This document shows, in pieces, positions 22,394 to 42,513 of a stretch of DNA of 64,000 bases (positions are counted from its first letter, which is position 1; each line of letters opens with the position of its first letter). The DNA lies in IMG/VR virus record IMGVR_UViG_3300017917_002466, positions 62,001-126,000 of that record, one strand, 5' to 3'. The notes under the pieces are model-generated. The model was not told the DNA's origin. It searched no databases and worked only from the letters and a program-made list of their open reading frames with translations. The position numbers were made by a program, and so were the translations under genes.

Positions 22394-23098
22394 ATGAAAA
22401 AAGTCGTGTTGATGAGCGGAAAAATCCACTGTGGAAAAAATCAATTCGCCCAGTTTCTCAAAGAAGAATTCAGGAATAAAGGTCTAAAGGTTTCCGAAGA
22501 CCTTTTTGCACGTTCTCTTAAAGACGGATGCAAAGAAGACTTTCGTAAGTTGACTAATGTCTTAGAAAGCATCTGTGAAGAAGTTAAATCCAAGATTGGA
22601 CTTTTTGTTGACCAAAGAGCCCATATGTTGAGCCCAAATATTGTCAAGGATATTGACAATTCTCTAGATAAGCTCAAGATTAAAGACGAGAACTGGTACG
22701 AAGACAAGACCGATATTACTCGTAATATTCTTCAGCTTTATGGTACTGAAATTTTCCGTAAAAGAGTAGACGAGAATTGGTGGGTCAAGCAGGTAAGGAA
22801 CCGATGTATCGCCTCAAACGACGATGTTATCATTGTCACAGACTGTAGGTTCCCAAATGAAATTACCGAAATGTTGTGTGATGATTATGAAACTGTAGTC
22901 ATTAGAATTAATAGAGATATAAATACTAATGAACAGATATCATCTCACGATTCTGAAACAGCCCTTAATAATTGGGAAATGTGGAACTATATTATTAACA
23001 ATAATGGTAATTTACAAACTTTAAAAGAATCAGCAAAAACAGTATGTGAAGATATACTACAAGAAAAATATGATTCTAACTACTTATTTAATAATTAA
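22394..23098 (+). CDS. Deoxynucleoside monophosphate kinase (gp1-like)
   Basis: SGKIHCGKN, RNILQLYGTE, TDCRFPNE, HDSE. Confidence 0.85.
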   Translation: MKKVVLMSGKIHCGKNQFAQFLKEEFRNKGLKVSEDLFARSLKDGCKEDFRKLTNVLESICEEVKSKIGLFVDQRAHMLSPNIVKDIDNSLDKLKIKDENWYEDKTDITRNILQLYGTEIFRKRVDENWWVKQVRNRCIASNDDVIIVTDCRFPNEITEMLCDDYETVVIRINRDINTNEQISSHDSETALNNWEMWNYIINNNGNLQTLKESAKTVCEDILQEKYDSNYLFNN

Positions 23099-23771
23099 TA
23101 TTAATGGAAGAACTTTTTCTTATTGGAAAAATAAAGGTTATATTATTCCAACATATAAAGATAAATTTGGACGAATAAGAGTTCAAAGAAATACTAAAAT
23201 AGAAGTCAAAGTTTCTGATTTGCCAAAAGGAAGTCATATTAAAGTTCTTTGTAAGTGTGATAATTGTGGAAAAGAAAGAATATTAAAATTTGCACAATAT
23301 AATCCAATATGTAAAAGTTGTAATTTACATTCTTATCAAAAAGACTTAAATCCAAATTGGAAAAATGGTTTTCCGAAATGTAAAATTTGTGGTTCAATAT
23401 TAAAAGACCGAAGGTCAAGTTTTTGTGTTGATTGTCTTTGGAAACAACAAGTTGGTTCAAAGCATCCAAAATATAACCACAAATTAACTGAAAAAGAAAG
23501 AAAATTATCTCATAATCGTGGTCTTAATTCAAAAAATTATTTTTGGAAAAAAGAAGTTCTACAAAGAGATAACCATACTTGTCAAAAATGTAGTTCAAAA
23601 GAATATCTTCAAGTTCATCATATTGACAATTTTAACGAAAATATTCAAAGACGTTATGATATAAATAATGGTATAACGCTTTGTAAGAAATGTCATAAAT
23701 TAATTCATAAAATTTTTGGAAATAAAACCAATACAAACCACTTAGAAAAATTTCTTTCAAAAATAATATAA
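23070..23771 (+). CDS. HNH homing endonuclease
   Basis: RDNHTCQKC..VHHI..NGITLCKKCHKLIH. Confidence 0.88.
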   Translation: MILTTYLIININGRTFSYWKNKGYIIPTYKDKFGRIRVQRNTKIEVKVSDLPKGSHIKVLCKCDNCGKERILKFAQYNPICKSCNLHSYQKDLNPNWKNGFPKCKICGSILKDRRSSFCVDCLWKQQVGSKHPKYNHKLTEKERKLSHNRGLNSKNYFWKKEVLQRDNHTCQKCSSKEYLQVHHIDNFNENIQRRYDINNGITLCKKCHKLIHKIFGNKTNTNHLEKFLSKII

Positions 23772-23783: not shown

Positions 23784-24182
23784 ATGGGAGCTTTTAAAGA
23801 TTTCGTAAACCAGAAGCTAAATGAAGAAGCCAAAAAGGTTTCAAGCAATCTTCTAAAGAACATCATAGACGTTCTCAAAGAGTACATCGCAACAGAGTAC
23901 GATTTGACAGAAGACGAGAAGATGCAGATTATCAATAATATGCAGATTGGAGTAGAAGAGCATGACAAGGGTATCTTGAAGAAAGGCCCTCGCTTTATTG
24001 CTACTTCAAACTATGATGAAGGTGAAGGAAAGTCAGTTCCAGTCGAAATCGTTATTGAGATTGTAACCGACAAGATTGGCCAGAAGCAAGAAGTTGCTCC
24101 AGCCGAAGAACCATCAGTACCAGATGAAGTTGCTGATGAAGGTGGAGAAGAAAGCACTGAGGGCAGTGGAGAGGAAGAGTAA
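23784..24182 (+). CDS. Hypothetical acidic protein
   Basis: ORF with SD. Confidence 0.65.
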   Translation: MGAFKDFVNQKLNEEAKKVSSNLLKNIIDVLKEYIATEYDLTEDEKMQIINNMQIGVEEHDKGILKKGPRFIATSNYDEGEGKSVPVEIVIEIVTDKIGQKQEVAPAEEPSVPDEVADEGGEESTEGSGEEE

Positions 24183-24185
24183 TTC

Positions 24186-24548
24186 GTGATCAAACTTAAT
24201 TTTTTAAACGAATACTATGGTTCAAAAAAACCTATTGAATCTCTTGAAGTTAATGAACTCTTAGAAATTTTAAAAAATTTTAAAAAAAGAGAAATTCAAA
24301 AACATAAAAATAATGAAAAATTTCAAACAACTAAGATAGATAAAGCTATTGAAACTACAAGTAAGCTTAATTTAAAAGGAATTTCTCTTTTAACTAAATG
24401 GATAGATATATTAAAAGAAAATGGATATTGGGAAGATAGTGACCCAATGATAGAACTTTCTAATAGATATGGCTCACAAGTTTTTGATATATATATTAAA
24501 CATAGCTCGGAAGTCCCTGTATTTATAAGAAAGGGAGTGGATTTCTAA
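24186..24548 (+). CDS. Hypothetical protein
   Basis: ORF in operon. Confidence 0.5.
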   Translation: MIKLNFLNEYYGSKKPIESLEVNELLEILKNFKKREIQKHKNNEKFQTTKIDKAIETTSKLNLKGISLLTKWIDILKENGYWEDSDPMIELSNRYGSQVFDIYIKHSSEVPVFIRKGVDF

Positions 24549-24761
24549 ATGTCAATCTTCAATGATATTGAAAAGGATATAATGTACGAAGTACTTCAAA
24601 AATGTGCTATAGATTATGCAAAGATTCACGGAGAAGATGAAAAAAATGAAGATGTAATCCTTATTAATAAGTTTCTTGAAAATATTACAAGATTTGACCT
24701 TGTAGAAGCCATTGTAGACAAACTAAAAGAAAAAGGTTACCAAATTTCTCAAAAGACTTGA
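24549..24761 (+). CDS. Hypothetical protein
   Basis: ORF in operon. Confidence 0.55.
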   Translation: MSIFNDIEKDIMYEVLQKCAIDYAKIHGEDEKNEDVILINKFLENITRFDLVEAIVDKLKEKGYQISQKT

Positions 24762-24907
24762 CAGACTTAGGAAAATGATATATATTAGATGAATATAGAT
24801 TTAAAAAAAATACCTATTAAGCTTCCAATCTTGAAGATAGATGGAGAAGAAATCAAAATTTTGGGCTTATTTAAAATCAAATATAAGAAAAAATTTTTAA
24901 AAAAACC

Positions 24908-24936
24908 TTGACAAACTCGTGAAAATATGTTATATT
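24908..24936 (+). promoter_or_regulatory. sigma70-type promoter of the tRNA array
   Basis: TTGACA-N17-TATATT; a similar promoter lies at 24758-24786. Confidence 0.75.
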
Positions 24937-24991
24937 AAGAAGGTCGATGAAAAAAGGTCAGAAACTATAAATAGTAATAGAAAGAAATAAT

Positions 24992-25068
24992 AGCGGGAGG
25001 CTAGGCCCAGTGGTCTGGAAAGTCTCATAAGCTTTCAACCTACGTGCAACTCGTAGTCCACGCAACCA
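24992..25068 (+). tRNA. tRNA-Met(CAT), atypical acceptor with 1:72 mismatch and bulge
   Basis: aaagt-ctCATaa-gcttt; T arm; CCA. Confidence 0.7.
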
Positions 25069-25084
25069 AATAAAGGAAAACATT

Positions 25085-25210
25085 ATGAAAAACATTATCT
25101 GTAAACAGCAACTCTCAAAGCATGAAGCAAGTTATATTGCCATGCCTGAATTATGCTCTTGGTTTAATGCCAATAATACAGATAGACCAGGAGCAAAAAG
25201 GGAAACCTGA
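25085..25210 (+). CDS. 41-aa putative leader peptide
   Basis: AAGGA SD; MKNIICKQQLSKHEASYIAMPELCSWFNANNTDRPGAKRET; ends 24 nt before a terminator. Confidence 0.55.
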   Translation: MKNIICKQQLSKHEASYIAMPELCSWFNANNTDRPGAKRET

Positions 25211-25233
25211 CTAATAATTTATCTTTAGGATAA

Positions 25234-25273
25234 AAAGGGAGTTGGGTAAAAACAACCGACTCCCTTTCTTTTT
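25234..25273 (+). terminator. Rho-independent terminator/attenuator before the tRNA array
   Basis: AAAGGGAGTTGG/CCGACTCCCTTT hairpin plus T tract. Confidence 0.8.
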
Positions 25274-25281
25274 GTACTGAT

Positions 25282-25293
25282 GATCTTTGACAA
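25282..25293 (+). promoter_or_regulatory. boxA-like antitermination sequence
   Basis: GATCTTTGACAA resembles rrn boxA GCTCTTTAACAA; no -10 at promoter spacing. Confidence 0.55.
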
Positions 25294-25394
25294 TTCGGGA
25301 ATTGATAAGCACTTTGTTGTGAAAAACACAACTAAAATGTAATTCTAAGCGACACCTGCTTTAAGTGGTGTGACAATATGAGAGAATATATTTT

Positions 25395-25468
25395 GCCCCC
25401 AAAGCATTAAGGTGATGCACTTGGCTCTTAACCAAGAGAAGAAGGTTCAATACCTTTTGGGGGTACCA
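25395..25468 (+). tRNA. tRNA-Lys(CTT)
   Basis: cttgg-ctCTTaa-ccaag; CCA. Confidence 0.9.
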
Positions 25469-25476
25469 AATTTTTT

Positions 25477-25562
25477 GGCGCGGATGGTAAGTGGTTGAAA
25501 TCAAACGGCTGTAACCCGTTCGCCTCACGGCTATGTAGGTTAAAATCCTACCCGCGTCACCA
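25477..25562 (+). tRNA. tRNA-Tyr(GTA)
   Basis: aacgg-ctGTAac-ccgtt; long variable arm; CCA. Confidence 0.9.
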
Positions 25563-25570
25563 AATTATAT

Positions 25571-25644
25571 AGGCTATTGGTGTAATAGAAACACATTTCT
25601 CTCCAAAAGAAAAGACAAGGGAGCATAACCTTTATAGCCTGCCA
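25571..25644 (+). tRNA. tRNA-Trp(CCA)
   Basis: tttct-ctCCAaa-agaaa; CCA. Confidence 0.85.
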
Positions 25645-25651
25645 ATTTTTT

Positions 25652-25726
25652 GCTTCCAAGGTGTTAAGGTTGCATTTCCGTCTTTTAAGCGGTAGGGTCT
25701 TGGTTCAAGTCCAAGTGGAAGCACCA
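25652..25726 (+). tRNA. tRNA-Lys(TTT)
   Basis: ctTTTaa loop; CCA. Confidence 0.88.
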
Positions 25727-25733
25727 AGTTTGT

Positions 25734-25810
25734 GGAACTGTAGCATAATTGGCTAGTGCACCACATTGTCAATGTGGGTTATGCGGGTTCAAATCCCGTC
25801 GGTTCCGCCA
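25734..25810 (+). tRNA. tRNA-Asp(GTC)
   Basis: ccaca-ttGTCaa-tgtgg; CCA. Confidence 0.9.
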
Positions 25811-25818
25811 TAAGTTAC

Positions 25819-25902
25819 ACCCTCGTCGCCTAGTGGTAATGGCACCAGACTTTTAATCTGACGAGCGCAAGCTCTTCACAGGTTCAAATCCTGTCGGGGG
25901 TA
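25819..25902 (+). tRNA. tRNA-Lys(TTT) with long variable arm
   Basis: caga-ctTTTaa-tctg; gagc-gcaa-gctc extra arm; no encoded CCA. Confidence 0.75.
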
Positions 25903-25914
25903 CTAAAAAGTTAT

Positions 25915-26001
25915 TCCAGAGTATGCAAACTGACAGGGCGGCTTGACTGTTAATCAAGTGTGGGAAACCATCTGTAGGTTTAAATCCTACCTCTGGAGCC
26001 A
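25915..26001 (+). tRNA. tRNA-Asn(GTT) with long variable arm
   Basis: cttga-ctGTTaa-tcaag; tgg-gaaa-cca extra arm; G73; CCA. Confidence 0.78.
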
Positions 26002-26036
26002 AATATTAACATTTACGGAATAATAAAAAGATATAA

Positions 26037-26112
26037 GGGTCTGTAGCTACAATGATAGAGCGCGAGCCCGTTAAGCTCGGAGATGTCAGTTTAACTCTGA
26101 CCGGACCCTCCA
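26037..26112 (+). tRNA. tRNA-Asn(GTT)
   Basis: cgagc-ccGTTaa-gctcg; CCA. Confidence 0.8.
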
Positions 26113-26118
26113 AATCAA

Positions 26119-26193
26119 GCAGTGTAGGCAGATCGGCTATGCGTCACTCTTCCAAAGTGAATCTGGTGAGTTCAACTCTCGCACACTGCACCA
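26119..26193 (+). tRNA. tRNA-Gly(TCC)
   Basis: tcact-ctTCCaa-agtga; CCA. Confidence 0.88.
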
Positions 26194-26200
26194 AAATTTC

Positions 26201-26274
26201 GGGGGTTTCTTCTAGTGGAAAGAAAACTGTCTCTGAAGCAGATAACGGTGGTTCAATTCCATCAACCCTCGCCA
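26201..26274 (+). tRNA. tRNA-Gln(CTG)
   Basis: ctCTGaa loop; CCA. Confidence 0.85.
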
Positions 26275-26292
26275 AAAAGTTTTTAGAAGAAA

Positions 26293-26454
26293 GCTGGGAA
26301 ACAGAGGTTCAAATCCTCTACTGAAGTTGATTTATAGAAGTATGCTGAATTTACTGGCAGGTAAATATAAGCAGAAAATATAAATCCTTTACAAATCAAA
26401 GCCTGCCAGCCGAGATAAGTAAAGTTCAGTTCATCTAGTGGGAGAATACCTGGC
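26293..26454 (+). ncRNA. Circularly permuted tRNA-like RNA with long internal hairpin
   Basis: T arm first, D arm last; ACTGAA/TTCAGT and GCTGGG/CCTGGC helices close a cloverleaf. Confidence 0.5.
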
Positions 26455-26461
26455 GTATTAT

Positions 26462-26536
26462 GGTGGTATTGGTGTAGTAGAAGCATCTGATCCTGTGAAG
26501 ATCAAGGGTTCGGAGCATATCCGAAATATCACCCCA
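26462..26536 (+). tRNA. tRNA-His(GTG)
   Basis: tgatc-ctGTGaa-gatca; G-1, C73; CCA. Confidence 0.88.
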
Positions 26537-26544
26537 AAATTTAT

Positions 26545-26633
26545 TAGGAAGTAGGCCCGTAATTGGTAGCGGTCTTGTTCTGGAAACAAGTGGCAATATG
26601 CTCCTGGGAGTTCGAGTCTCCCCTTCCTAACCA
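26545..26633 (+). tRNA. Class II tRNA, Ser(GGA) or Pro(TGG), anticodon register ambiguous
   Basis: cttgt-tctggaa-acaag; long variable arm; CCA. Confidence 0.65.
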
Positions 26634-26641
26634 AGAATTAT

Positions 26642-26716
26642 GCCGCCGTAGCCAAGTAGAAGGTGATGCCTCTGCAAAAGGTAATCTTTGGGGCGCAACT
26701 CCCCACGGTGGCTCCA
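26642..26716 (+). tRNA. tRNA-Cys(GCA)
   Basis: ctGCAaa loop; U73; CCA. Confidence 0.88.
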
Positions 26717-26793
26717 AATTATTTTCACCAATCTGTGATTTTTTATCATCAAAAGATATAAATACCTCTGATGGGTAAACCAAAAGAGGATTT

Positions 26794-27423
26794 ATGGACT
26801 TAGAAAATAAAAGATACCAATATCTAAAAGACTGGAGAAAAAGAACTAAGCAAAGAATGGTTGATGCTTTTGATGGAAAATGTGGAATTTGTGGATATAA
26901 TAAATGTAAAGAAGCATTAGAATTTCATCATATTGATCCAACAAAAAAAGATTTTACTATTTCAAAAAACAAATTTAACAATTGGGAAAAATTAGTTAAA
27001 GAATTAAAAAAATGTATCTGTATTTGTTCAAATTGTCATAAAGAAATTCATAATGAAATAATTAAAATTCCAATTGATGTTAAAAAATTTAATGAAAATT
27101 ATAATGAATATAGAGTAGAAAAAGAAATTAATTATATTGAATGTCCAGTTTGTAAAAAATTAATGGAAGATACACGTAATTATTGTTCGATGGATTGTTT
27201 TAATAAGATTAGAGAAAAAGTAGATTGGAAAATATTTGATTTAAATAAAATGATTTTAACATCATCTATTTTAGAAATTTCTAAAATAGTTGGAGTTTCA
27301 AATACATCTATTCAAAAAAGACTAAAAAAATTAAATCTTCCTTTTAAAAGAAAAGATATTTTAAAATATAAAATGGATGCTGGCGTGGCTGGTAGTGACG
27401 GTTTGTCTGATAAACAAATGTAG
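26794..27423 (+). CDS. HNH endonuclease inside the tRNA array
   Basis: CGICGY..LEFHHIDP..CSNCHKEIH; late promoter and SD hairpin upstream. Confidence 0.87.
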   Translation: MDLENKRYQYLKDWRKRTKQRMVDAFDGKCGICGYNKCKEALEFHHIDPTKKDFTISKNKFNNWEKLVKELKKCICICSNCHKEIHNEIIKIPIDVKKFNENYNEYRVEKEINYIECPVCKKLMEDTRNYCSMDCFNKIREKVDWKIFDLNKMILTSSILEISKIVGVSNTSIQKRLKKLNLPFKRKDILKYKMDAGVAGSDGLSDKQM

Positions 27424-27451
27424 CGAAGTTCGATTCTTCGGGCATCCACCA
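27375..27451 (+). tRNA. tRNA-Ile(GAT)
   Basis: tttgt-ctGATaa-acaaa; CCA; overlaps the HNH 3' end. Confidence 0.82.
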
Positions 27452-27457
27452 AATTGT

Positions 27458-27540
27458 ACCTTGAGCGTAAAGTCGTACATGGCAGAACTCCGGACTCTGC
27501 TGTTATGTAAAACGTGGTGAAAATCCCATCCAAGGTGCCA
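27458..27540 (+). tRNA. Atypical tRNA-Arg(CCG)
   Basis: ctCCGga loop; non-canonical D and T arms; CCA. Confidence 0.55.
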
Positions 27541-27546
27541 AATTAT

Positions 27547-27622
27547 GCCGCTTGAGCAAGTGTGGTCATTGCATCAGTTTGAAGAACTGACTAACACGGT
27601 TCGATTCCGTGGGGCGGCACCA
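27547..27622 (+). tRNA. tRNA-Phe(GAA)
   Basis: tcagt-ttGAAga-actga; CCA. Confidence 0.9.
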
Positions 27623-27729
27623 AGTTTTTATAAATACAAGTAGAAGTTTGGTCCTCAAAAGAAAGATTCAATTTAACCAAAAAGTTACTGAACAAGGAGA
27701 AATCTATTGAAAATACTTAAACCAGGAAC

Positions 27730-27948
27730 ATGAATACAAAAAACCGTTTTGATTTTTTGTTATGTTATTTGGGTAGACACAACTGGAAGAACGAAAGACC
27801 TAAACCTTTATTAACAATGTTCGGTTTAATTATTACATTTGAGAAATATAGATATTGTCAAAGGTGCTTAAAAAGACAAATCTGGGAAGACATTTACGGT
27901 GATTTAAATAAGATTGGAGAATGGATAGACTGTAAAAAGAATTCATAG
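27730..27948 (+). CDS. Hypothetical small protein
   Basis: ORF between tRNAs; C..GRHNW..CQRC. Confidence 0.4.
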   Translation: MNTKNRFDFLLCYLGRHNWKNERPKPLLTMFGLIITFEKYRYCQRCLKRQIWEDIYGDLNKIGEWIDCKKNS

Positions 27949-28020
27949 TGGTGTAGAATAATGTAGTTCCCCTCGTTTTCAGCGAGAAATGTGCGGGTTC
28001 AAGTCTCGTCGCCACTACCA
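27947..28020 (+). tRNA. tRNA-Glu(TTC)
   Basis: ctcg-ttTTCag-cgag; CCA. Confidence 0.8.
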
Positions 28021-28027
28021 AATTTAT

Positions 28028-28103
28028 GCTCCCATCGTCTAACGGTTTAGGATGCCAGATTTTCAATCTGAGAACGTGAGTTCAACTCTCACTGGGAGTA
28101 CCA
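28028..28103 (+). tRNA. tRNA-Glu(TTC)
   Basis: caga-ttTTCaa-tctg; CCA. Confidence 0.88.
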
Positions 28104-28109
28104 AGTTAT

Positions 28110-28185
28110 GCCGTTCAAGCAATTGAAGTCAATGCGCTTGCCTGAAGAGCAAGATAATCCGGGGCAGTACCGGGGGGCGGCACCA
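28110..28185 (+). tRNA. tRNA-Phe(GAA)
   Basis: cttgc-ctGAAga-gcaag; CCA. Confidence 0.82.
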
Positions 28186-28221
28186 CGGAAAATGCGGGGT
28201 CGAATCCCGTCACCACTACCA
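28186..28221 (+). pseudogene. Orphan 3' half of tRNA-Glu
   Basis: gaaaatgcggggtcgaatcccgtcaccactacca resembles the 3' half of 27947-28020. Confidence 0.7.
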
Positions 28222-28255
28222 AATTACCGAAGGACATAATTTTATAAATATAAGT

Positions 28256-28582
28256 ATGAAATGCTTATTTTTACATAAAGGATGTCCATATAATTATAAT
28301 CAACATAACTTACAACATTCTTATGGTTGGATAAGTCCAGATGGTATTTTTTATGGTTGTGAAAAATATGAGCATATAAAAAGATCAGAGTTCTTACTAC
28401 CTAATTATCCAAATTCGGAAGCTAAATTAGAATATGACAGATGGATAAAAGTTTCAGAAGAATTAAATGATAAAATAATATGTTTTGGAAAAGTTACACA
28501 AGCACAAATAGATATATTATCAGATTGGTGTATTGTGCATTGCTTTAAATTTCCACACGAATATATCGATAATTTTCTATAA
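28256..28582 (+). CDS. Hypothetical protein
   Basis: GWISPDG..C..YEH motif; late promoter upstream. Confidence 0.6.
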   Translation: MKCLFLHKGCPYNYNQHNLQHSYGWISPDGIFYGCEKYEHIKRSEFLLPNYPNSEAKLEYDRWIKVSEELNDKIICFGKVTQAQIDILSDWCIVHCFKFPHEYIDNFL

Positions 28583-28635
28583 CATAGTTCATAAATACCA
28601 TTGATGCTATTTACGACATCAACGGGGGAAATAGA

Positions 28636-28815
28636 TTGGAAATTATTTTAGTTTTATCCATAGCAGTATTTTTAGCAAGTGGACTAAGTTTTTATTTTGG
28701 AATGTTGTTTGAAGGATTGAGATGGTCTGAAAAAACAAATATTAACGGAAAAATAATATCTTTTATGGGTAATCAATATAAAGTAACAAAAATACTTTTA
28801 AAACCAAAAGAATAG
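28636..28815 (+). CDS. Small membrane protein (TTG start, not in ORF track)
   Basis: MEIILVLSIAVFLASGLSFYFGMLF; G-rich SD. Confidence 0.45.
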   Translation: MEIILVLSIAVFLASGLSFYFGMLFEGLRWSEKTNINGKIISFMGNQYKVTKILLKPKE

Positions 28816-28836
28816 GACGATTAAAAATTTTAAAAT

Positions 28837-28912
28837 CGGGATGTGGCGCAGCGAGTAGCGCGCTCGCTTTGGGAGCGAGTGGTCGCCGGGGCGGAGCCGG
28901 CCATCCCGACCA
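28837..28912 (+). tRNA. tRNA-Pro(TGG)
   Basis: ctcgc-ttTGGga-gcgag; CCA. Confidence 0.88.
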
Positions 28913-28928
28913 AGTTTCAAAAATTCTA

Positions 28929-28985
28929 AAGGATGAGTTCAGCAATCAAAAATTCTTATTAAAAAAGAAAACAAGTTCATCCTGT
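28929..28985 (+). ncRNA. Y-RNA-like element 1
   Basis: AAGGATGAGTTCAGCAA..TTCATCCTGT; inner ttctt-attaaaa-aagaa hairpin. Confidence 0.75.
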
Positions 28986-28993
28986 GAATCAAT

Positions 28994-29080
28994 GGAAGGT
29001 TAGAGCGTAATTAGTAGCGTGTCGGTCTTGAAAACCGAACCCGAAAGGGCCTGGGGATGCGATTTCCTCACCTTCCGCCA
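28994..29080 (+). tRNA. tRNA-Ser(TGA)
   Basis: tcggt-ctTGAaa-accga; long arm; G73; CCA. Confidence 0.88.
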
Positions 29081-29086
29081 ATTTTT

Positions 29087-29161
29087 GGGGGATTAGTTTA
29101 TTCAGGAAAACATAAGCCTTGCAAGCTTAAAAGCCCGGAGCGTAGCCGGGATTCTCCACCA
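29087..29161 (+). tRNA. tRNA-Ala(TGC)
   Basis: ctTGCaa loop; G3:U70; CCA. Confidence 0.9.
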
Positions 29162-29167
29162 AATTAT

Positions 29168-29242
29168 ACCAAGTGGCAGGTCAGCATCTGAGGACGTCTC
29201 ATAAGCGTTCTGAATAGGGGTCAGCACCCTAACTTGGTACCA
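29168..29242 (+). tRNA. tRNA-Met(CAT)
   Basis: gacgt-ctCATaa-gcgtt; CCA. Confidence 0.8.
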
Positions 29243-29256
29243 AAGGAGTAACTTAT

Positions 29257-29564
29257 ATGCCAAAAGCCACAAAGGAAAATCAACCTTAACAGTTGTAGGT
29301 GAAACTGAAGATGGTAAGAAAGTTGTCAGAGGATTGTTTTTAATAAGCACTTCAATAACTGGATTACCTTTAGAAGATTGCTTAGAAATTTTGAAAAAGA
29401 ATAATCTTGTGGTAGATTGGATAGACTTTATAGAAGATGCTATCAAGTATAAATGGAAGATGGAAAGAACATTGATAAAGATAGAAACATCAGTTGAAGA
29501 AGTTTACGGAAAAGAATATTGTCAAGAAGTAATGAAAAGAATTAAAGGATGGGTTCAGCAATAA
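29257..29564 (+). pseudogene. Hypothetical protein with frameshift near its start
   Basis: SD GGAG plus ATG at 29257 is out of frame with the open KSHKGKSTLTVVGETEDGKKVVRGLFLIS.. frame. Confidence 0.5.
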
Positions 29565-29664
29565 AAATCCATTACAAGGCGCGTGTCGGTGGTTCGATTC
29601 CATCCGCTCCCACATTACTGGAGTGTAGCTCAGTTGGTAGAGCAGCAAAAAAAAGTCCATCCTG
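29545..29664 (+). ncRNA. Y-RNA-like element 2 enclosing a circularly permuted tRNA-Val (YrlA-like)
   Basis: AAGGATGGGTTCAGCAA..TCCATCCTG around T arm, loop-closed acceptor stem and D arm. Confidence 0.85.
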
Positions 29665-29678
29665 AATTTATGTAAAAT

Positions 29679-29757
29679 GCCAAGTTCGCATAGCGGTCGA
29701 TTGCGCCTCTCTTGTAAGGAGGAATTACCGGGGGTTCGACTCCCTCACTTGGCTCCA
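29679..29757 (+). tRNA. tRNA-Thr(TGT)
   Basis: ctTGTaa loop; CCA. Confidence 0.88.
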
Positions 29758-29770
29758 GACTATAAAACAG

Positions 29771-29831
29771 AAGACTGGTTCCAGCAAACCAAAACTATTT
29801 GCTTGTTAAGCAAACAAAGTAATCCAGTCTG
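29771..29831 (+). ncRNA. Y-RNA-like element 3
   Basis: AAGACTGGTTCCAGCAA..CCAGTCTG; inner tttgc-ttGTTaa-gcaaa anticodon-like hairpin. Confidence 0.75.
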
Positions 29832-29860
29832 AGTTTAAATTTTTTAAAAAATAATAAATC

Positions 29861-29950
29861 GGTAAAATGGGCGAGTGGTTTATGCCAGCACACTGCTAAC
29901 GTGCCGGGCCCTAAAAAGCTCCACAGGTTCGAATCCTGTTTTTACCGCCA
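29861..29950 (+). tRNA. tRNA-Ser(GCT)
   Basis: ctGCTaa loop; long arm; G73; CCA. Confidence 0.9.
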
Positions 29951-29957
29951 AATAAAC

Positions 29958-30034
29958 GCACCCATAGTTCAGATAGCAAGAATACGTTCTTGGTAAGAAT
30001 GAGGCGGTTGGTGCAAGTCCAACTGGGTGCTCCA
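29958..30034 (+). tRNA. tRNA-Thr(GGT)
   Basis: cgttc-ttGGTaa-gaatg; CCA. Confidence 0.88.
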
Positions 30035-30037
30035 TAT

Positions 30038-30111
30038 GCCACTATAGCTTAATGTAAAGCCTTCGCCTCGTAAGCGAAAAGATTTCATTTCAAATATGAA
30101 TAGTGGCTCCA
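30038..30111 (+). tRNA. tRNA-Thr(CGT)
   Basis: ttcgc-ctCGTaa-gcgaa; CCA. Confidence 0.85.
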
Positions 30112-30120
30112 AAGATAAAT

Positions 30121-30199
30121 ACCTGTGTATCTCACCAGTCTTCTAAACTGTGTAAGAGTAATTGGATTAATGTGGGTTCAAGTCCCATCACAGGTTCCA
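30121..30199 (+). tRNA. D-armless tRNA-like RNA, anticodon TCT
   Basis: Perfect acceptor ACCTGTG/CACAGGT, T arm and CCA; no D arm; ~20-nt variable region. Confidence 0.65.
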
Positions 30200-30227
30200 C
30201 CTGACAATCAAGGAGAAATATCATATA

Positions 30228-30431
30228 ATGAAACGTAGAGATTTTCTAGGATTTACAATAGCATCCTTACTCTTAGTAGGATGTGCAGCTAGCCCAAATA
30301 TTATATATTATGTTGAGTCAGAGAAAGAAGTTGAATCGATGAGAAAACGATTAGAAGAAAGGGGTGAAAAAGTAGTTGATGTGAAGTTTGATAAAATAAG
30401 TAATTTGTATATCATTAAAATTAAAAAATAA
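30228..30431 (+). CDS. Small putative Tat-signal lipoprotein
   Basis: MKRRDFL..LLLVGC. Confidence 0.6.
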   Translation: MKRRDFLGFTIASLLLVGCAASPNIIYYVESEKEVESMRKRLEERGEKVVDVKFDKISNLYIIKIKK

Positions 30432-30445
30432 TTTAAGAAAGAAAA

Positions 30446-30922
30446 ATGAATAAGCAAAATACTAATAAACTTATAAAAAAACATAGATATATGTTTGATG
30501 AATTATTCAGAAGCCGATTAATCAAAAAAGAACAAGATAGATTGGCAGATGAATTTTCAGAAGCTAAAATTGAAGACGATGAAATAAAAATTGCTCAAAT
30601 AATGGAAGAACAAAGACAAGTTGGTTCTTATTATCCAATAGCCTTTGGTTTTGAATGTGGTGATGGATGGTATAAACTTCTTGATGATTTAATGACAGAA
30701 ATTGAAAAAATAGATACAGAAAAGAAGGTTGAAGTTCATCAAGTAAAAGAAAAATCTGGTGGATTAAGATTTTATGCCGAGAATACTTCAAATGAAATAG
30801 AAGATATTATCAGCCGATATATGGATAGATCATATCAAACTTGTGAAATTTGTGGGCAACCAGGAAAAACAAACAAAAAAGGATGGTTGAGAACGGCTTG
30901 TAAGGAACACGAAAGAAATTAA
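30446..30922 (+). CDS. Conserved phage hypothetical protein
   Basis: FECGDGW..QVKEKSGGLRFY..CEICG. Confidence 0.75.
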   Translation: MNKQNTNKLIKKHRYMFDELFRSRLIKKEQDRLADEFSEAKIEDDEIKIAQIMEEQRQVGSYYPIAFGFECGDGWYKLLDDLMTEIEKIDTEKKVEVHQVKEKSGGLRFYAENTSNEIEDIISRYMDRSYQTCEICGQPGKTNKKGWLRTACKEHERN

Positions 30923-30930
30923 GAGATTAA

Positions 30931-31016
30931 GCGGTCGTGGAGGAATGGCAGACTCACAAGGCTAAGAACCTTGTGGAAGAAATTCCGTGAGGGTTCAACT
31001 CCCTCCGACCGCACCA
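30931..31016 (+). tRNA. tRNA-Leu(AAG)
   Basis: acaagg-ctAAGaa-ccttgt; long arm; A73; CCA. Confidence 0.82.
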
Positions 31017-31105
31017 AATAAAAATATCAAAGAAGCTTTGGAAAAATTAAAACTTACATATAATGGTGGAAATTTCGTAAGAGCAAAGAAAATATTAAAT
31101 GATAT

Positions 31106-31182
31106 GCTGGGGTAGCCCAATTGGTAGAGGCGATTTGTTTAGAGCGAATATGTTGTGGGTTCGAATCCCATCTCCAGTACCA
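31106..31182 (+). tRNA. tRNA-Leu(TAG), short variable loop
   Basis: atttg-ttTAGag-cgaat; CCA. Confidence 0.82.
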
Positions 31183-31190
31183 AGATTTAA

Positions 31191-31265
31191 GCAGTGTTGG
31201 CCTAATAGTTGGGCGCTAGCCTTCCAAGCTGGTTCAAGTGGGAGCGTTACCCACACACTGCTCCA
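31191..31265 (+). tRNA. tRNA-Gly(TCC)
   Basis: ctagc-ctTCCaa-gctgg; CCA. Confidence 0.82.
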
Positions 31266-31272
31266 AGTTTAT

Positions 31273-31366
31273 GCTAAGATGGTGGAATGGAAAGACACGG
31301 TAGCTTCAGAAGCTACTGAGAACCTTGCTAGTTCTCGTGTAGGTTCGAATCCTGCTCTTAGCACCA
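31273..31366 (+). tRNA. tRNA-Leu(CAG)
   Basis: gtagc-ttCAGaa-gctac; long arm; CCA. Confidence 0.9.
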
Positions 31367-31374
31367 GAAATTAA

Positions 31375-31449
31375 GCTCTTGTAGTGTAACGTATAGCACG
31401 AGTCGCGTCGAACGATTTAGTGAGGGTTAGATTCCTTCCAAGAGCGCCA
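31375..31449 (+). tRNA. tRNA-Arg(TCG), G at position 33
   Basis: agtcg-cgTCGaa-cgatt; CCA. Confidence 0.65.
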
Positions 31450-31453
31450 ATAC

Positions 31454-31525
31454 ACTTCCTTAGTGAAAAGGAAATAATATTACCCTACGAAGGTAAAGTT
31501 GATGGTTCAAATCCATCAGGAAGTA
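31454..31525 (+). tRNA. tRNA-Arg(ACG)
   Basis: ttacc-ctACGaa-ggtaa; no encoded CCA. Confidence 0.82.
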
Positions 31526-31529
31526 TATT

Positions 31530-31667
31530 TTTATAATGTAACTCTCTATGACAATTAGCACAAACAAGAATACATTTATCTAGTTCTTTTTGAAAAATAT
31601 CCCAAATTCTATATTTGGCCTTTGAAAGAGAGAATTCTTTTTTATTCTGGTCTAAAAGGTGTACCAA
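31530..31667 (-). pseudogene. HNH endonuclease relic
   Basis: HLLDQNKKEFSLS..ELDKCILVCANCHRELH, paralogous to 26794-27423. Confidence 0.75.
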
Positions 31668-31684
31668 AAAATTATGGAGAAATT

Positions 31685-32074
31685 ATGAATAAATTTAAAA
31701 GTGTAGTTATTAGATCAGCAGAAAATAATATTCACAATAAACAACTAAGAAAAAGAGTTGAATATAGTCTTTCCGCTGACTTTGAATATATACCCAGAGA
31801 AATTGTTGTTTTGATAATTGTCAATGGTAAATATTATTTGAAAAGTAAAAAGGGTGATTATGTAGATGATAAAACTAAAGTTAATGTAGATGCTTTGATT
31901 TATAATAATATTTACTATGCTTATATTTTGGAAAAGCAAAAAAATAAATCAATTACTTTTAAAAAAAAAGAAGACGTTAAAGACAAGAATAAGTATAAAA
32001 ATAAAAATGCCATCGCATTGATTCCTAAAAAATGGATTGAAGATGGAACTATTGTTCTTGATAAAAAAGTATGA
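31685..32074 (+). CDS. Hypothetical protein
   Basis: GGAG SD before ATG 31685. Confidence 0.55.
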   Translation: MNKFKSVVIRSAENNIHNKQLRKRVEYSLSADFEYIPREIVVLIIVNGKYYLKSKKGDYVDDKTKVNVDALIYNNIYYAYILEKQKNKSITFKKKEDVKDKNKYKNKNAIALIPKKWIEDGTIVLDKKV

Positions 32075-32075
32075 T

Positions 32076-32149
32076 GCTCCTATCAGCTAACGGTAGGCTT
32101 CCAAACCTTCAATCTGAGAATTAAGTTTCAACTTCCCATAGGAGTACCA
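32076..32149 (+). pseudogene. Degenerate tRNA-Glu(TTC)
   Basis: Similar to 28028-28103, but the T and anticodon stems are disrupted. Confidence 0.65.
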
Positions 32150-32156
32150 AGTTTAT

Positions 32157-32233
32157 GCGCCTGTAATTCAGTAGAATAGAATAATGGTTTTCTAAACCAT
32201 AAGTCACAGGTTTGAATCCTGTCAGGCGTACCA
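32157..32233 (+). tRNA. tRNA-Arg(TCT)
   Basis: atggt-ttTCTaa-accat; CCA. Confidence 0.88.
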
Positions 32234-32241
32234 AATAACAT

Positions 32242-32316
32242 ACAGCTATAGTACAATGGATAGTGCACTAGTTTCCTAAACCTGAAATTCTGGTTCGATT
32301 CCAGATAGCTGTACCA
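32242..32316 (+). tRNA. tRNA-Arg(CCT)
   Basis: ttCCTaa loop; CCA. Confidence 0.8.
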
Positions 32317-32337
32317 AATTTTATCTCTTTTTATCAT

Positions 32338-32422
32338 AGGAGCCAAGGCAACTGGTTGTGGCCGCCAGTCTTATAAGCTGGGAAACTAAACGAGGTGGGT
32401 TCAATTCCCACGGCTCCTACCA
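32338..32422 (+). tRNA. tRNA-Ile(TAT)
   Basis: ccagt-ctTATaa-gctgg; enlarged variable region; CCA. Confidence 0.8.
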
Positions 32423-32459
32423 AAAATATAAATATTTTCAAATATACAATGGAGGGTGA

Positions 32460-32669
32460 ATGGCACACATCTGCGAATTTTTTCCTTGTCATAAACTAAT
32501 TGATGGGTTTAATTGTAAAAATTGTTATTGCCCACTTTATGACCATACCGATTGTCAACATTTTGGTGGGGAACCTAAATTTCTTTACTCAAAAGGGGAG
32601 AAAATAAAAGACTGTTCAGATTGTATTCTCCCTCATAAGCCAGACTTTAAAATACAAACAAGATATTGA
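32460..32669 (+). CDS. Cysteine-rich small domain protein
   Basis: [24 protein letters not shown]. Confidence 0.7.
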
Positions 32670-32694
32670 CATTTTACAAGGATGATATTATATT
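32666..32694 (+). promoter_or_regulatory. sigma70-type promoter
   Basis: TTGACA-N17-TATATT. Confidence 0.7.
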
Positions 32695-32702
32695 AATAAT
32701 AT

Positions 32703-32778
32703 GCCTGTTTCTTCTAGTGGTATAGGAAGTTTGCCTTACAAGCAGAAAACGATGGTTCGATTCCATCAATAGGCACCA
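32703..32778 (+). tRNA. tRNA-Val(TAC)
   Basis: ctTACaa loop; CCA. Confidence 0.88.
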
Positions 32779-32785
32779 AATATTT

Positions 32786-32856
32786 ACTCGTTTAGTTCAA
32801 CGGAAGAATATCTGTTTGACGTACAGAAGACAATAGTTCAACTCTATTAACGAGTA
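32786..32856 (+). tRNA. tRNA-Val(GAC)
   Basis: tctgt-ttGACgt-acaga; no encoded CCA. Confidence 0.82.
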
Positions 32857-32917
32857 TAAAAACAAATTATGATTCGTTAAATTATGGTAATGGACAAAAA
32901 ACTAAACATAAAAATAA

Positions 32918-32991
32918 GCGGAAGTAGTTCAACGGTAGAATGCGACTTTGCCAAGGTTGAGACAGGAGTTCAACTCTCCTTTTCCGCACCA
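32918..32991 (+). tRNA. tRNA-Gly(GCC)
   Basis: ttGCCaa loop; CCA. Confidence 0.88.
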
Positions 32992-32997
32992 AATTAC

Positions 32998-33074
32998 TGG
33001 GGTGTTGCCTAATGGATCAAGGCGCGGGTCTTTGAAGCCTGTCCGTGAAGGTTCAATTCCTTCCACCCCAACCA
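32998..33074 (+). tRNA. tRNA-Gln(TTG)
   Basis: ctTTGaa loop; U1:A72; CCA. Confidence 0.88.
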
Positions 33075-33130
33075 GATAAACATAAATATTAATATAGGAT
33101 TTGATTTTGAACATTTTAAAGGAGGTTTGT

Positions 33131-33433
33131 ATGAAGATGGTTCCGTTGTACAATAAGTTGATTGTTGAACTTCTTCCCGAAGAGTCCGAAAAGAGATCAG
33201 CAACAGGTTTAATTCTTCCGGGAAAAATTTCTCCGTATTACAGGGGAAAGGTGACTGGTGTTGGTAAAGGTCATTATCAAAATGCTCAAAGAATTCCAAT
33301 GGATGTTAAGGAAGGAGATATTGTAGTCTTCTTAAAGAACTGTGGAATGGGAATTGAGTTTGATAACGGAAATAACCCAACAAAGCTTATTTTGGATGAT
33401 ACAAATATTTACGCAGTAGAGGAAAACGACTAA
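33131..33433 (+). CDS. groES: GroES co-chaperonin
   Basis: PLYNKLIV..SATGLILP..GKVTGVGKG..DVKEGDIV. Confidence 0.9.
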   Translation: MKMVPLYNKLIVELLPEESEKRSATGLILPGKISPYYRGKVTGVGKGHYQNAQRIPMDVKEGDIVVFLKNCGMGIEFDNGNNPTKLILDDTNIYAVEEND

Positions 33434-33489
33434 ATTGTCACAGCCAAACTGGGAATTTTAGATCAAAAATAAAAAAATTGTATATAAAT

Positions 33490-33573: not shown

Positions 33574-33583
33574 CTAAATTAAT

Positions 33584-41678: not shown

Positions 41679-41815
41679 AAGAGTAGGTTCTGCAATCAAA
41701 ATAATACTTAAAGGAAGTCCCAATGTCATAGCCGGGGACACAAAATAATCGGTTGTGGTGGACTTTTATTAATTGAGAAAGTTAGTTCTAAAAGAAATAA
41801 TCTGACTACTCTGGG
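41679..41815 (+). ncRNA. Y-RNA-like element 4
   Basis: AAGAGTAGGTTCTGCAA..CTACTCTG. Confidence 0.7.
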
Positions 41816-41835
41816 AATTACTAAATTATGGCTTA

Positions 41836-41969
41836 AAGGATGGGTTCGGCAAACCAAAATAGCCCGAAAGGGCATCAAGGTAGCCGTCAATAAAAGGCGG
41901 CGGAGAGGAAGTTAAACTTGCAAAGGCTTCCCTCTCTAAAATAAAAAAGAAACCTTTCTAACATCCTGT
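41836..41969 (+). ncRNA. Y-RNA-like element 5
   Basis: AAGGATGGGTTCGGCAA..CATCCTGT; GAAA-tetraloop and other inner hairpins. Confidence 0.75.
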
Positions 41970-41995
41970 AGCTTATTCTTTGACAAACGCATCTA

Positions 41996-42134
41996 AAGGA
42001 TGAATTCGGCAACCAAATTTGATGCGAAAGCATCACTATAACAGGTTATAAGCTGCGACACCGAAAGGTGACCAGATACTAACCAAGGTTTTTTGGAGAC
42101 TTTTCCCTAAATAAAAATCTTTCAAGCATCCTGT
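41996..42134 (+). ncRNA. Y-RNA-like element 6
   Basis: AAGGATGAATTCGGCAA..CATCCTGT; two GAAA tetraloop hairpins. Confidence 0.75.
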
Positions 42135-42152
42135 GATGTTTTCAAAAAGACC

Positions 42153-42181
42153 TTGACAAACTTGTGAGAAGATATTATATT
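42153..42181 (+). promoter_or_regulatory. sigma70-type promoter within the ncRNA array
   Basis: TTGACA-N17-TATATT. Confidence 0.7.
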
Positions 42182-42229
42182 AAGAAAGAGGGCAGAAAAT
42201 TTCGGTAAAATGATATATACATATTCGGG

Positions 42230-42321
42230 AAGGATAGATTCAGCAAACTAAAAGGAAAATAGCTCGCAAGAGCTTATTTGGTTCAAATCCAAAAACGTCG
42301 CAAGACGAAAAACTATCCTGT
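42230..42321 (+). ncRNA. Y-RNA-like element 7
   Basis: AAGGATAGATTCAGCAA..CTATCCTGT; two GCAA tetraloops flanking a tttgg-TTCAAAT-ccaaa T-arm mimic. Confidence 0.78.
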
Positions 42322-42341
42322 GACCTACAAGATAATAAATG

Positions 42342-42401
42342 AAGGGTGAGTTCAGCAACTCAAAAACAAACAACTCATAATTGTTAAAAAGTTCACCCTG
42401 T
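42342..42401 (+). ncRNA. Y-RNA-like element 8
   Basis: AAGGGTGAGTTCAGCAA..TTCACCCTGT; aacaa-ctCATaa-ttgtt anticodon mimic. Confidence 0.78.
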
Positions 42402-42434
42402 TTTTTCTACAGTTCGGATTGAAAGAAAGTTTTG

Positions 42435-42486
42435 AAGGTTGGATTCCGCAATTAAAATCCATAATTAGGAAAAAAGACCAACCTGT
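42435..42486 (+). ncRNA. Y-RNA-like element 9
   Basis: AAGGTTGGATTCCGCAA..CCAACCTGT. Confidence 0.75.
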
Positions 42487-42513
42487 AACCTTTAATGTTT
42501 AGGAGGCCCGCAA

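What the first reader, a model, noticed from the sequence alone, without database searches (positions are those of the whole stretch)
26293..26454. Second circularly permuted tRNA mimic with a ~100-nt hairpin insert
Seen, in order: GCTGGG (26293-98), AAAC, T arm AGAGG-TTCAAAT-CCTCT, ACTGAA (26320-25), a long imperfect hairpin (TGGCAGGT/GCCTGCCA), TTCAGT (26425-30), D arm with AGTGGG, then CCTGGC (26449-54). The pairings ACTGAA/TTCAGT and CCTGGC/GCTGGG close a cloverleaf opened at the anticodon loop. There is no CCA end or anticodon. An alternative pairing of TTCAGT with 26344-26354 is also possible. Inference: an elbow-mimicking decoy or scaffold RNA of the same topology as YrlA but without the Y-like stem.
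Basis: partly seen in the sequence, partly recalled or inferred. Interest (0 to 1): 0.6.

Follow-up and report, generated by a model that had tools for sequence, protein, structure and literature searches.

The report
Anticodon-less tRNA mimic in phage
A jumbo phage carries, inside its tRNA gene array, a conserved RNA that folds like a tRNA body but has no anticodon loop and a capped, extended acceptor stem; it resembles the tRNA-like part of bacterial Y RNAs (YrlA), and the phage also encodes a hidden Ro60-like protein, other Y-like RNAs and RNA-repair enzymes.

Summary
At 26293-26454 (+), between tRNA-Gln(CUG) and tRNA-His, lies a cloverleaf opened at the anticodon: closing stem, 4-nt variable region, T arm, 6-bp acceptor stem capped by a 99-nt insert, U8, D arm, closing stem. 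Three related phages carry it at the same site. All four helices are kept through compensatory changes, and the tRNA tertiary signature is intact (U8, A14, GG, G53:C61, TTCRA; Levitt pair G15:C48 in three, A15:U48 in one). After in-silico de-permutation ARAGORN calls all four cognate pairs as tRNA and none of 12 cross-phage chimeras. The core diverges like neighbouring tRNAs; the insert diverges like random sequence. It is therefore a selected tRNA-body mimic with YrlA topology, not two remnants. It fails the YrlA membership tests: no Rfam hit, no Ro-binding motif, and 16 kb from the Ro gene. Context found here: a DUF2828 protein (42514-43986) folds as Ro60, eight Y-stem RNAs (one enclosing the first mimic), RtcB and a CCA-adding enzyme. 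The candidate lacks that Y stem. Function as a decoy or scaffold in tRNA damage and repair is inferred. No RNA data exist. The element was lost or decayed in two related lineages.

The parts
26201..26274 (+). tRNA-Gln(CUG) with encoded CCA. Its 3' maturation would set the 5' end of the element's transcript.
   Evidence: ARAGORN; Rfam 52.2 bits
26275..26292 (+). 18-nt A/U-rich 5' spacer or tail. It is not conserved in sequence among homologues.
26293..26298 (+). Closing stem, 5' strand (equivalent to the anticodon-stem 3' strand).
   Evidence: Pairs with 26449-54 (G-C, C-G, U-G, G-U, G-C, G-C); recovered blind by RNAalifold; covaries
26299..26302 (+). Variable region AAAC (ARAY in all four). 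C26302 is position 48, the Levitt partner of G15.
26303..26319 (+). T arm AGAGG-TTCAAAT-CCTCT with G53:C61 and T54 T55 C56 R57 A58.
26320..26325 (+). Acceptor stem, 3' strand ACTGAA. It abuts the T stem and no CCA follows.
26326..26424 (+). 99-nt insert capping the acceptor stem (78-98 nt in homologues). Contains the stem CTGGCAGG 26354-61 / CCTGCCAG 26402-09. The conserved motif RAGTAAAR is at 26417-24.
26425..26430 (+). Acceptor stem, 5' strand TTCAGT.
26431..26448 (+). U8-C9, then the D arm ATCT-AGTGGG-AGAA-TA (A14 at 26437, G15 at 26438, GG at 26440-42).
26449..26454 (+). Closing stem, 3' strand CCTGGC.
26455..26462 (+). 8-nt 3' tail GTATTATG ending at G-1 of tRNA-His. RNase P cleavage there would set the 3' end.
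   Evidence: TATG is conserved before tRNA-His
26463..26536 (+). tRNA-His(GUG) with G-1:C73 and a non-canonical T loop.
29545..29665 (+). Context: the 'first' mimic. Its YrlA-like tRNA core (29581-29646, 7-bp acceptor stem, 8-nt cap) is enclosed by the Y-like stem AAGGATGG...CCATCCTG.
41680..42500 (+). Context: six tandem Y-stem RNA units directly upstream of the Ro60-like gene.
42514..43986 (+). Context: Ro60-fold protein (Pfam DUF2828 + DUF7788).
48222..49541 (-). Context: RtcB RNA ligase.

Best explanation
It is a free-standing tRNA-body mimic with the same circularly permuted topology as the tRNA-like domain of the bacterial Y RNA YrlA, encoded as one unit of the phage's tRNA operon. Shown: the sequence folds as a closing stem (anticodon-stem equivalent), variable region, T arm, acceptor stem closed by a long variable insert, U8 and a D arm. 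All nucleotides needed for the tRNA elbow are kept. The architecture is maintained by compensatory substitutions in four phages. Inferred: it is co-transcribed with the tRNAs and released by maturation of its neighbours, namely 3' processing of tRNA-Gln and RNase P cleavage at tRNA-His. It then folds into an L shape that cannot decode (no anticodon loop) and, as encoded, cannot be charged (acceptor end capped, no CCA). It acts as a tRNA-shaped ligand: a competitor or docking platform for proteins that read the tRNA elbow and body. The likeliest setting is the tRNA damage-and-repair conflict for which this phage is otherwise equipped (about 36 tRNAs, a Ro60-fold protein with Y-like RNAs, RtcB, an Rnl2-type ligase in relatives, and a CCA-adding enzyme). 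Unlike the neighbouring first mimic, it is not tethered to the Ro60-like protein through the phage's Y stem.
For: Anatomy. RNAalifold, given no structure, recovers the closing stem, T arm and D arm, with double-sided changes in 7 of 14 pairs. In the acceptor stem 19 of 20 cells pair, every position changes pair type, and the register is fixed by tRNA geometry. The closing stem pairs 5/5, 5/5, 5/5 and 4/5. The fractions of local 5-mers that pair equally well multiply to about 4e-8 (acceptor) and 6e-8 (closing). U8, A14, GG, G53:C61 and TTCRA are present in all four, and the Levitt pair covaries: G15:C48 in three, A15:U48 in L006. De-permuted constructs were called tRNA by ARAGORN in 4 of 4 cognate combinations and 0 of 12 chimeras. 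Core identity is 47-79% against 60-86% for flanking tRNAs; the insert is at shuffle level. There is no consistent parental isoacceptor. There is one copy per genome; the CM scores the four members at 126-162 bits and the next best hit at 25 bits. Strong promoter-like sites lie upstream of the array, and there is no promoter or terminator in the element. Context: a Ro60 fold, RtcB, a CCA-adding enzyme, and Y-stem units absent from the candidate. Precedent: YrlA has the T/AS/D order and is recognised by tRNA enzymes (PMC4201824), and its tRNA-like domain has been proposed as a competitive inhibitor of an anticodon nuclease (PMC7790460).
Against: There is no transcript or end-mapping evidence; the only public run holding the phage is DNA. 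Only four members are known, so the covariation statistics are descriptive. The element is dispensable: it is absent in the L191-194 clade and in L151, and decayed in G001. A decoy that lacks the anticodon loop would bind anticodon-specific nucleases poorly. No partner has been identified. Folding energy alone is unremarkable (z = -1.28).
Confidence: 0.5

Rival explanations
1. It is a processing cassette. The tRNA-like fold is a handle for RNase P (cutting 5' of the acceptor 5' strand) and RNase Z or exonucleases (cutting 3' of the acceptor 3' strand). The about 95-nt insert is excised as a small RNA, leaving a nicked two-piece tRNA-like molecule that may receive CCA. This is what happens to M. 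smegmatis YrlA and to permuted two-piece tmRNA.
For: M. smegmatis YrlA is cut by RNase P in its acceptor stem and gains CCA in vivo (PMC4201824). The phage encodes a CCA-adding enzyme. The candidate lacks CCA, an RNase Z anti-determinant, whereas 31 of 35 array tRNAs encode it. A conserved RAGTAAAR motif lies 6-18 nt before the acceptor 5' strand, and insert length is kept at 78-99 nt.
Against: The acceptor stems are only 5-6 bp, with mismatches beyond that. Chen et al. attribute RNase P cleavage to a 7-bp stem and saw none for the shorter Salmonella YrlA. The insert sequence is at random-level identity, which is unexpected for a functional sRNA.
Confidence: 0.2
2. It is a Y RNA of the phage's Ro60-like protein that uses a different, unrecognised binding module, for example within the insert or the closing stem and tails.
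For: The phage has a Ro60-fold protein and a YrlA-like RNA in the same tRNA array. Both complete genomes that hold the element also hold the Ro60-like gene (G000; G002 through P0012).
Against: It has neither the phage's own Y-stem motif (AAGGnTGnnTTCnGCAA...CAnCCTG) nor GNCGAAN0-1G. It lies 16 kb from the gene. The L191 clade keeps the Ro60-like gene and Y-stem RNAs but lacks the element.
Confidence: 0.12
3. It is a cis-acting element of the tRNA operon, such as a folding insulator or RNase P entry site, that aids maturation of the adjacent tRNA-His.
For: It always lies just upstream of tRNA-His: 8-10 nt in three phages. The tRNA-His of the window has a non-canonical T loop.
Against: In L006 it lies 69 nt from tRNA-His. 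L005 and L006 have canonical tRNA-His T loops and still have the element. L191 and G001 have non-canonical tRNA-His genes without an intact element.
Confidence: 0.08
4. It is a non-functional relic: the 3' half of one decayed tRNA gene next to the 5' half of another, or a dimeric-tRNA artefact.
For: Tandem isoacceptors in these arrays do give the same descriptor pattern by accident. The element has been lost or has decayed in some lineages.
Against: No complete tRNA overlaps either half; only 18 and 8 nt separate it from its neighbours. The two halves co-evolve: 4 of 4 cognate pairs against 0 of 12 chimeras, with compensatory pairs and a covarying Levitt pair. The core is as conserved as real tRNAs. 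There is no parental isoacceptor.
Confidence: 0.06
5. It is a true circularly permuted tRNA gene. Its ends are joined to make an anticodon loop and its acceptor stem is opened to give a working tRNA.
For: The 3' half lies upstream of the 5' half, RNA ligases are encoded by the phage, and a CCA-adding enzyme is present.
Against: The flanks hold no conserved anticodon-loop sequence; they are A/U-rich and differ in length and sequence. The acceptor stem is 5-6 bp. There is no bulge-helix-bulge motif, and bacteria have no known splicing endonuclease for one. The array already covers the codon families.
Confidence: 0.03

Closest known systems
YrlA (Rfam RF02553), the tRNA-like Y RNA of bacteria and some phages (Chen et al. 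2014, PMC4201824)
   Same: The order of parts is identical: closing stem, variable region, T arm, acceptor stem closed by a loop, two nucleotides, D arm, closing stem. Elbow-forming nucleotides are conserved and the 15:48 Levitt pair covaries. Some YrlA RNAs also have longer acceptor stems.
   Different: There is no Rfam match even at E = 10, no GNCGAAN0-1G motif, and no Y-type stem formed by the two ends. It lies 16 kb from the Ro60-like gene rather than within 4 kb. It sits inside a tRNA array, and its acceptor stem carries a 78-99-nt insert.
The window's own first mimic (29545-29665) and its counterparts L003:15999-16071 and L191:6016-6087
   Same: It has the same permuted tRNA-like core and lies in the same tRNA array on the same strand.
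   Different: The first mimic has a 7-bp acceptor stem with a 7-8-nt cap, matches the YrlA core (33.8 bits), is enclosed by the phage's Y-stem motif, and is present in all relatives examined. The two are not alike in sequence.
Circularly permuted tRNA genes (Cyanidioschyzon merolae type) and two-piece permuted tmRNA
   Same: The T arm and acceptor 3' strand are encoded upstream of the acceptor 5' strand and D region, with an intervening segment at the acceptor end.
   Different: There is no anticodon loop, no tag reading frame or pseudoknots, no CCA and no bulge-helix-bulge motif. Neither ARAGORN nor Rfam calls a tmRNA.
Other tRNA-like processing or mimicry elements (mascRNA, viral 3' tRNA-like structures)
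   Same: A tRNA-shaped fold is used outside decoding and is recognised by tRNA enzymes.
   Different: Those keep the normal 5'-to-3' tRNA order and a free acceptor end; this one is permuted and capped.

Membership tests
YrlA (RF02553) | tRNA-like domain with V, T, acceptor stem-loop and D in that order, closed by a stem | tested here: met
YrlA (RF02553) | Match to the Rfam covariance model at or above the gathering score (69 bits) | tested here: not met
   No YrlA hit on 26270-26465 even at E = 10. The first mimic reaches only 33.8 bits.
YrlA (RF02553) | Ro60-binding motif GNCGAAN0-1G near the 5' end (or this phage's own Y-stem motif) | tested here: not met
   Neither motif is in the element, its flanks or its three homologues.
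YrlA (RF02553) | Encoded within 4 kb of a Ro60 orthologue on the same strand | tested here: not met
   Same strand, but 16,060 nt upstream of the Ro60-fold gene at 42514-43986.
YrlA (RF02553) | Bound by Ro60/Rsr; modified by TruB and DusA | not testable with these tools
   Needs immunoprecipitation and modification mapping.
Canonical tRNA gene | Contiguous cloverleaf with a 7-nt anticodon loop and a free 7-bp acceptor end | tested here: not met
   No tRNA call by ARAGORN or Rfam on the locus. ARAGORN calls it only after artificial de-permutation with a supplied loop and CCA.
Circularly permuted tRNA gene | 3' half encoded upstream of the 5' half | tested here: met
Circularly permuted tRNA gene | Termini that rebuild an anticodon loop, and a 7-bp acceptor stem with a discriminator (and CCA) | tested here: not met
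   The flanks are not conserved, the acceptor stem is 5-6 bp and there is no CCA.
Two-piece (permuted) tmRNA | Tag reading frame and pseudoknots downstream of the acceptor 5' strand | tested here: not met
   Only 24 nt of D arm and closing stem, then 8 nt, precede tRNA-His. No ARAGORN tmRNA, and no Rfam tmRNA hit on the locus.
Dimeric-tRNA artefact | Each half belongs to a complete neighbouring tRNA | tested here: not met
   The neighbours are complete tRNA-Gln and tRNA-His, 18 and 8 nt away; no further halves are present.

The most novel reading that the evidence does not exclude
A previously undescribed class of phage small RNA: an anticodon-less, acceptor-capped tRNA body made from the tRNA operon. 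It would imitate a tRNA whose anticodon loop has been cut out and so engage the host's or the phage's broken-tRNA machinery (anticodon nucleases, RtcB or RtcR-type sensors, CCA or repair enzymes) independently of Ro60. Alternatively, after excision of the insert, it would become a two-piece chargeable tRNA-like molecule.
Probability: 0.2. Interest if true: 0.8.

Novelty: new variant of a known kind. Interest (0 to 1): 0.55.

Why it matters
Phage tRNA arrays are usually read simply as codon supply or as replacements for tRNAs destroyed by host defences. This array also holds non-decoding tRNA-shaped RNAs under selection, in a phage that carries a Ro60-fold protein which Pfam's TROVE model does not recognise, a battery of Y-like RNAs, RtcB and a CCA-adding enzyme. 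That connects the bacterial Ro60/Y RNA/RtcB repair module to jumbo-phage tRNA arrays. It also offers a natural comparison for asking what the tRNA-like module of Y RNAs does, still an open question: one mimic is enclosed by a Y stem and the other is not.

Tried and rejected
(1) Megablast of 24000-30000 against GenBank phages found no match.

(2) Four viral-contig pattern scans added no homologues. One was non-specific, and one built only from unpaired motifs returned only chance hits.

(3) The metagenome scan with a dNMP-kinase profile gave mostly short contigs or duplicates.

(4) A BLAST hit in G001 was an ordinary tRNA-Val(UAC).

(5) The Pfam TROVE search of the genome was blank. This turned out to be a false negative, as the fold search showed.

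(6) The single-sequence fold of the DUF2828 protein was unusable (pLDDT 41). A phmmer search against the PDB found nothing.

(7) The search for RNA sequencing runs found only a DNA run from a pond metagenome.

(8) The record behind L188 could not be reached through the genome search. I walked upstream with the look-up of encoding contigs instead.

(9) I considered and rejected tmRNA, a group I intron, a promoter or terminator inside the insert, a coding insert, and a helper role for non-canonical tRNA-His (no correlation).

(10) The G001 gap (L003:13700-13943) keeps a T arm and a GTAAAGTA motif, but I could find no D arm or closing stem, so I treat it as decayed. 

(11) Only genetic code 11 was used.

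Full report
**Setting.** The window is bases 62001-126000 of a complete 253,664-bp IMG/VR jumbo-phage record with direct terminal repeats, assembled from a pond metagenome. Bases 25395-33663 hold about 36 tRNA genes on the + strand, interspersed with HNH endonuclease genes. The finding lies in a 188-nt gap between tRNA-Gln(CUG) (26201-26274) and tRNA-His (26463-26536).

**Observation.** The unconstrained MFE fold of 26275-26462 reproduces the closed cloverleaf, but its energy is not unusual (z = -1.28). Neither Rfam nor ARAGORN recognises anything at the locus. A hand-written descriptor for the permuted topology finds the locus. It also finds an artefact made by two tRNA-Lys isoacceptors, and it gives 0-3 hits in shuffled genomes. 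The single occurrence is therefore suggestive, not decisive.

**Relatives.** I used the dNMP kinase 3 kb upstream as a synteny anchor. Three phages carry the same architecture directly upstream of tRNA-His: L005:3867-4018, L007:5546-5705 and L006:13255-13394.
- RNAalifold, given no structure, recovers the closing stem, T arm and D arm, with double-sided changes in 7 of 14 pairs.
- The acceptor helix has a register fixed by tRNA geometry: it abuts the T stem on one side and U8 on the other. It pairs in 19 of 20 cells, and every position changes pair type.
- The closing stem pairs 5/5, 5/5, 5/5 and 4/5. Only 0.4-8% of local 5-mers pair as well in each phage.
- U8, A14, the D-loop GG, G53:C61 and T54-T55-C56-R57-A58 are invariant. 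The Levitt pair covaries: G15:C48 in three phages, A15:U48 in L006.
- I re-opened each element at the acceptor and closed it with an arbitrary anticodon loop. ARAGORN then called all four cognate 5'/3' combinations as tRNA and none of the 12 cross-phage chimeras.
- The core diverges at the rate of the neighbouring real tRNAs, while the insert is at shuffled-sequence identity. The insert keeps only its length (78-99 nt), a RAGTAAAR motif 6-18 nt before the acceptor 5' strand, and a CG-rich patch.
- Neither half has a consistent parental isoacceptor.
- A covariance model built from the four sequences scores them at 126-162 bits and nothing else above 25 bits, in five phage records and 21 loci.

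The element is therefore real, single-copy and under selection for a tRNA-like fold.

**Distribution.** The element is absent from the L191-194 clade, where tRNA-His follows tRNA-Gln after 42 nt, and from L151. In G001 only the T arm and a motif survive. On a single-gene kinase tree with moderate support, the L191 clade groups with L007, which has the element, and G001 groups with the window. This suggests an ancestral element that was later lost or decayed twice. It is accessory, not essential.

**Context that changes the reading.** A Pfam TROVE search of the genome was blank. However, the 490-aa ORF at 42514-43986 (Pfam DUF2828 + DUF7788) gives a confident model when folded with 38 homologues (pLDDT 88.6). 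Its 13 best PDB matches are all Ro60/TROVE proteins over the full length, including a Thermus phage Ro60 and D. radiodurans Rsr (probability 1.00, TM about 0.6).
- Directly upstream of that gene lie six tandem units with a 5' AAGGnTGnnTTCnGCAA and a 3' AAGnnCAnCCTG whose 7-bp stems covary.
- Two more such units lie in the tRNA array. One of them encloses the first mimic (29545-29665), whose core matches YrlA at 33.8 bits.
- The same motif sits next to the DUF2828 gene in relatives.
- The phage also encodes RtcB (48222-49541, minus strand) and a CCA-adding enzyme. Relatives show an Rnl2-type ligase beside RtcB.

This is a phage version of the Ro60/Y RNA/RtcB repair module (PMC4201824, PMC7790460, PMC7824862).

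**Mechanism.** The fold and its conservation are shown. The following steps are inferred.
- Co-transcription with the array: promoter-like TTGACA-17-TATATT sites lie at 24758 and 24908, and there is no terminator.
- Release by maturation of the flanking tRNAs.
- An L-shaped RNA that cannot decode and, as encoded, cannot be charged.

I consider a tRNA-body ligand (decoy or scaffold) in the tRNA damage-and-repair conflict the most likely function (0.5). The main rival is a processing cassette in which RNase P and RNase Z excise the insert, as in M. smegmatis YrlA (0.2). It is weakened by the 5-6-bp acceptor stems and the unconstrained insert. The remaining rivals are a Ro60-like partner bound through an unrecognised module (0.12), a cis helper for tRNA-His (0.08), a relic (0.06) and a true permuted tRNA (0.03).

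[quoted passage not shown] I file it as a new variant of a known kind. No paper found here describes such elements in phage tRNA arrays.

**Limits.** There are four members and no RNA data, and the phage is uncultured.

Noticed in passing
window 42514-43986 (+): A DUF2828/DUF7788 protein folds as a full-length Ro60 (TROVE ring plus vWA), although Pfam TROVE does not detect it. The family has more than 2,800 close homologues, many on large phage contigs, so Ro60-like proteins may be far more common in phages than annotation suggests.
   Followed up: partly
window 41680-42500 (+); also about 28925-28990 and 29545-29665: Eight Y-RNA-like units share a 5' AAGGnTGnnTTCnGCAA and a 3' AAGnnCAnCCTG with covarying 7-bp stems. 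Six are tandem and lie directly upstream of the Ro60-like gene, several behind TTGACA-N17-TATATT promoters. One (about 42230-42325) contains a T-arm-like TTTGG-TTCAAAT-CCAAA. The motif is conserved next to the DUF2828 gene in L188 and L191.
   Followed up: partly
window 29581-29646 (+); L003:15999-16071; L191:6016-6087: The compact YrlA-like mimic has a 7-bp acceptor stem and a 7-8-nt cap, like M. smegmatis YrlA, which RNase P cleaves. It is conserved in all relatives examined, unlike the long-insert element.
   Followed up: partly
window 46207-46280 (-); L188:13541-13614: A tRNA with anticodon CUA (an amber suppressor, labelled Pyl by ARAGORN) is conserved near RtcB. I did not test whether phage genes carry in-frame TAG codons.
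   Followed up: no
window 26463-26536; L003:13944-14018; L191:4875-4950 approx.: The tRNA-His genes of several of these phages have non-canonical T loops (AGCATAT, GTCGGGT). ARAGORN misses the L191 copy altogether.
   Followed up: no
L191:4325-4575; L192:3825-4085; L147:3880-4180 approx.: A tRNA gene in relatives is interrupted in the anticodon region by an insertion of about 200 nt, probably a group I intron. In L191 it lies next to an HNH gene remnant. I did not see it in the window.
   Followed up: no
window 25819-25903, 31454-31525, 32785-32857, 33490-33574: Four of the 35 + strand tRNAs lack an encoded CCA, which gives the phage-encoded CCA-adding enzyme (G000:197575-197937) a substrate.
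   Followed up: no
window 23046-23771, 26794-27423 and others: HNH homing-endonuclease genes are scattered through the tRNA array, and their positions differ between relatives.
   Followed up: no
L192:19249-20162; L193:19249-20162: In two relatives a Cas12f1-like TnpB (PF07282) gene occupies the position of the HSP20 and DUF2828 genes.
   Followed up: no
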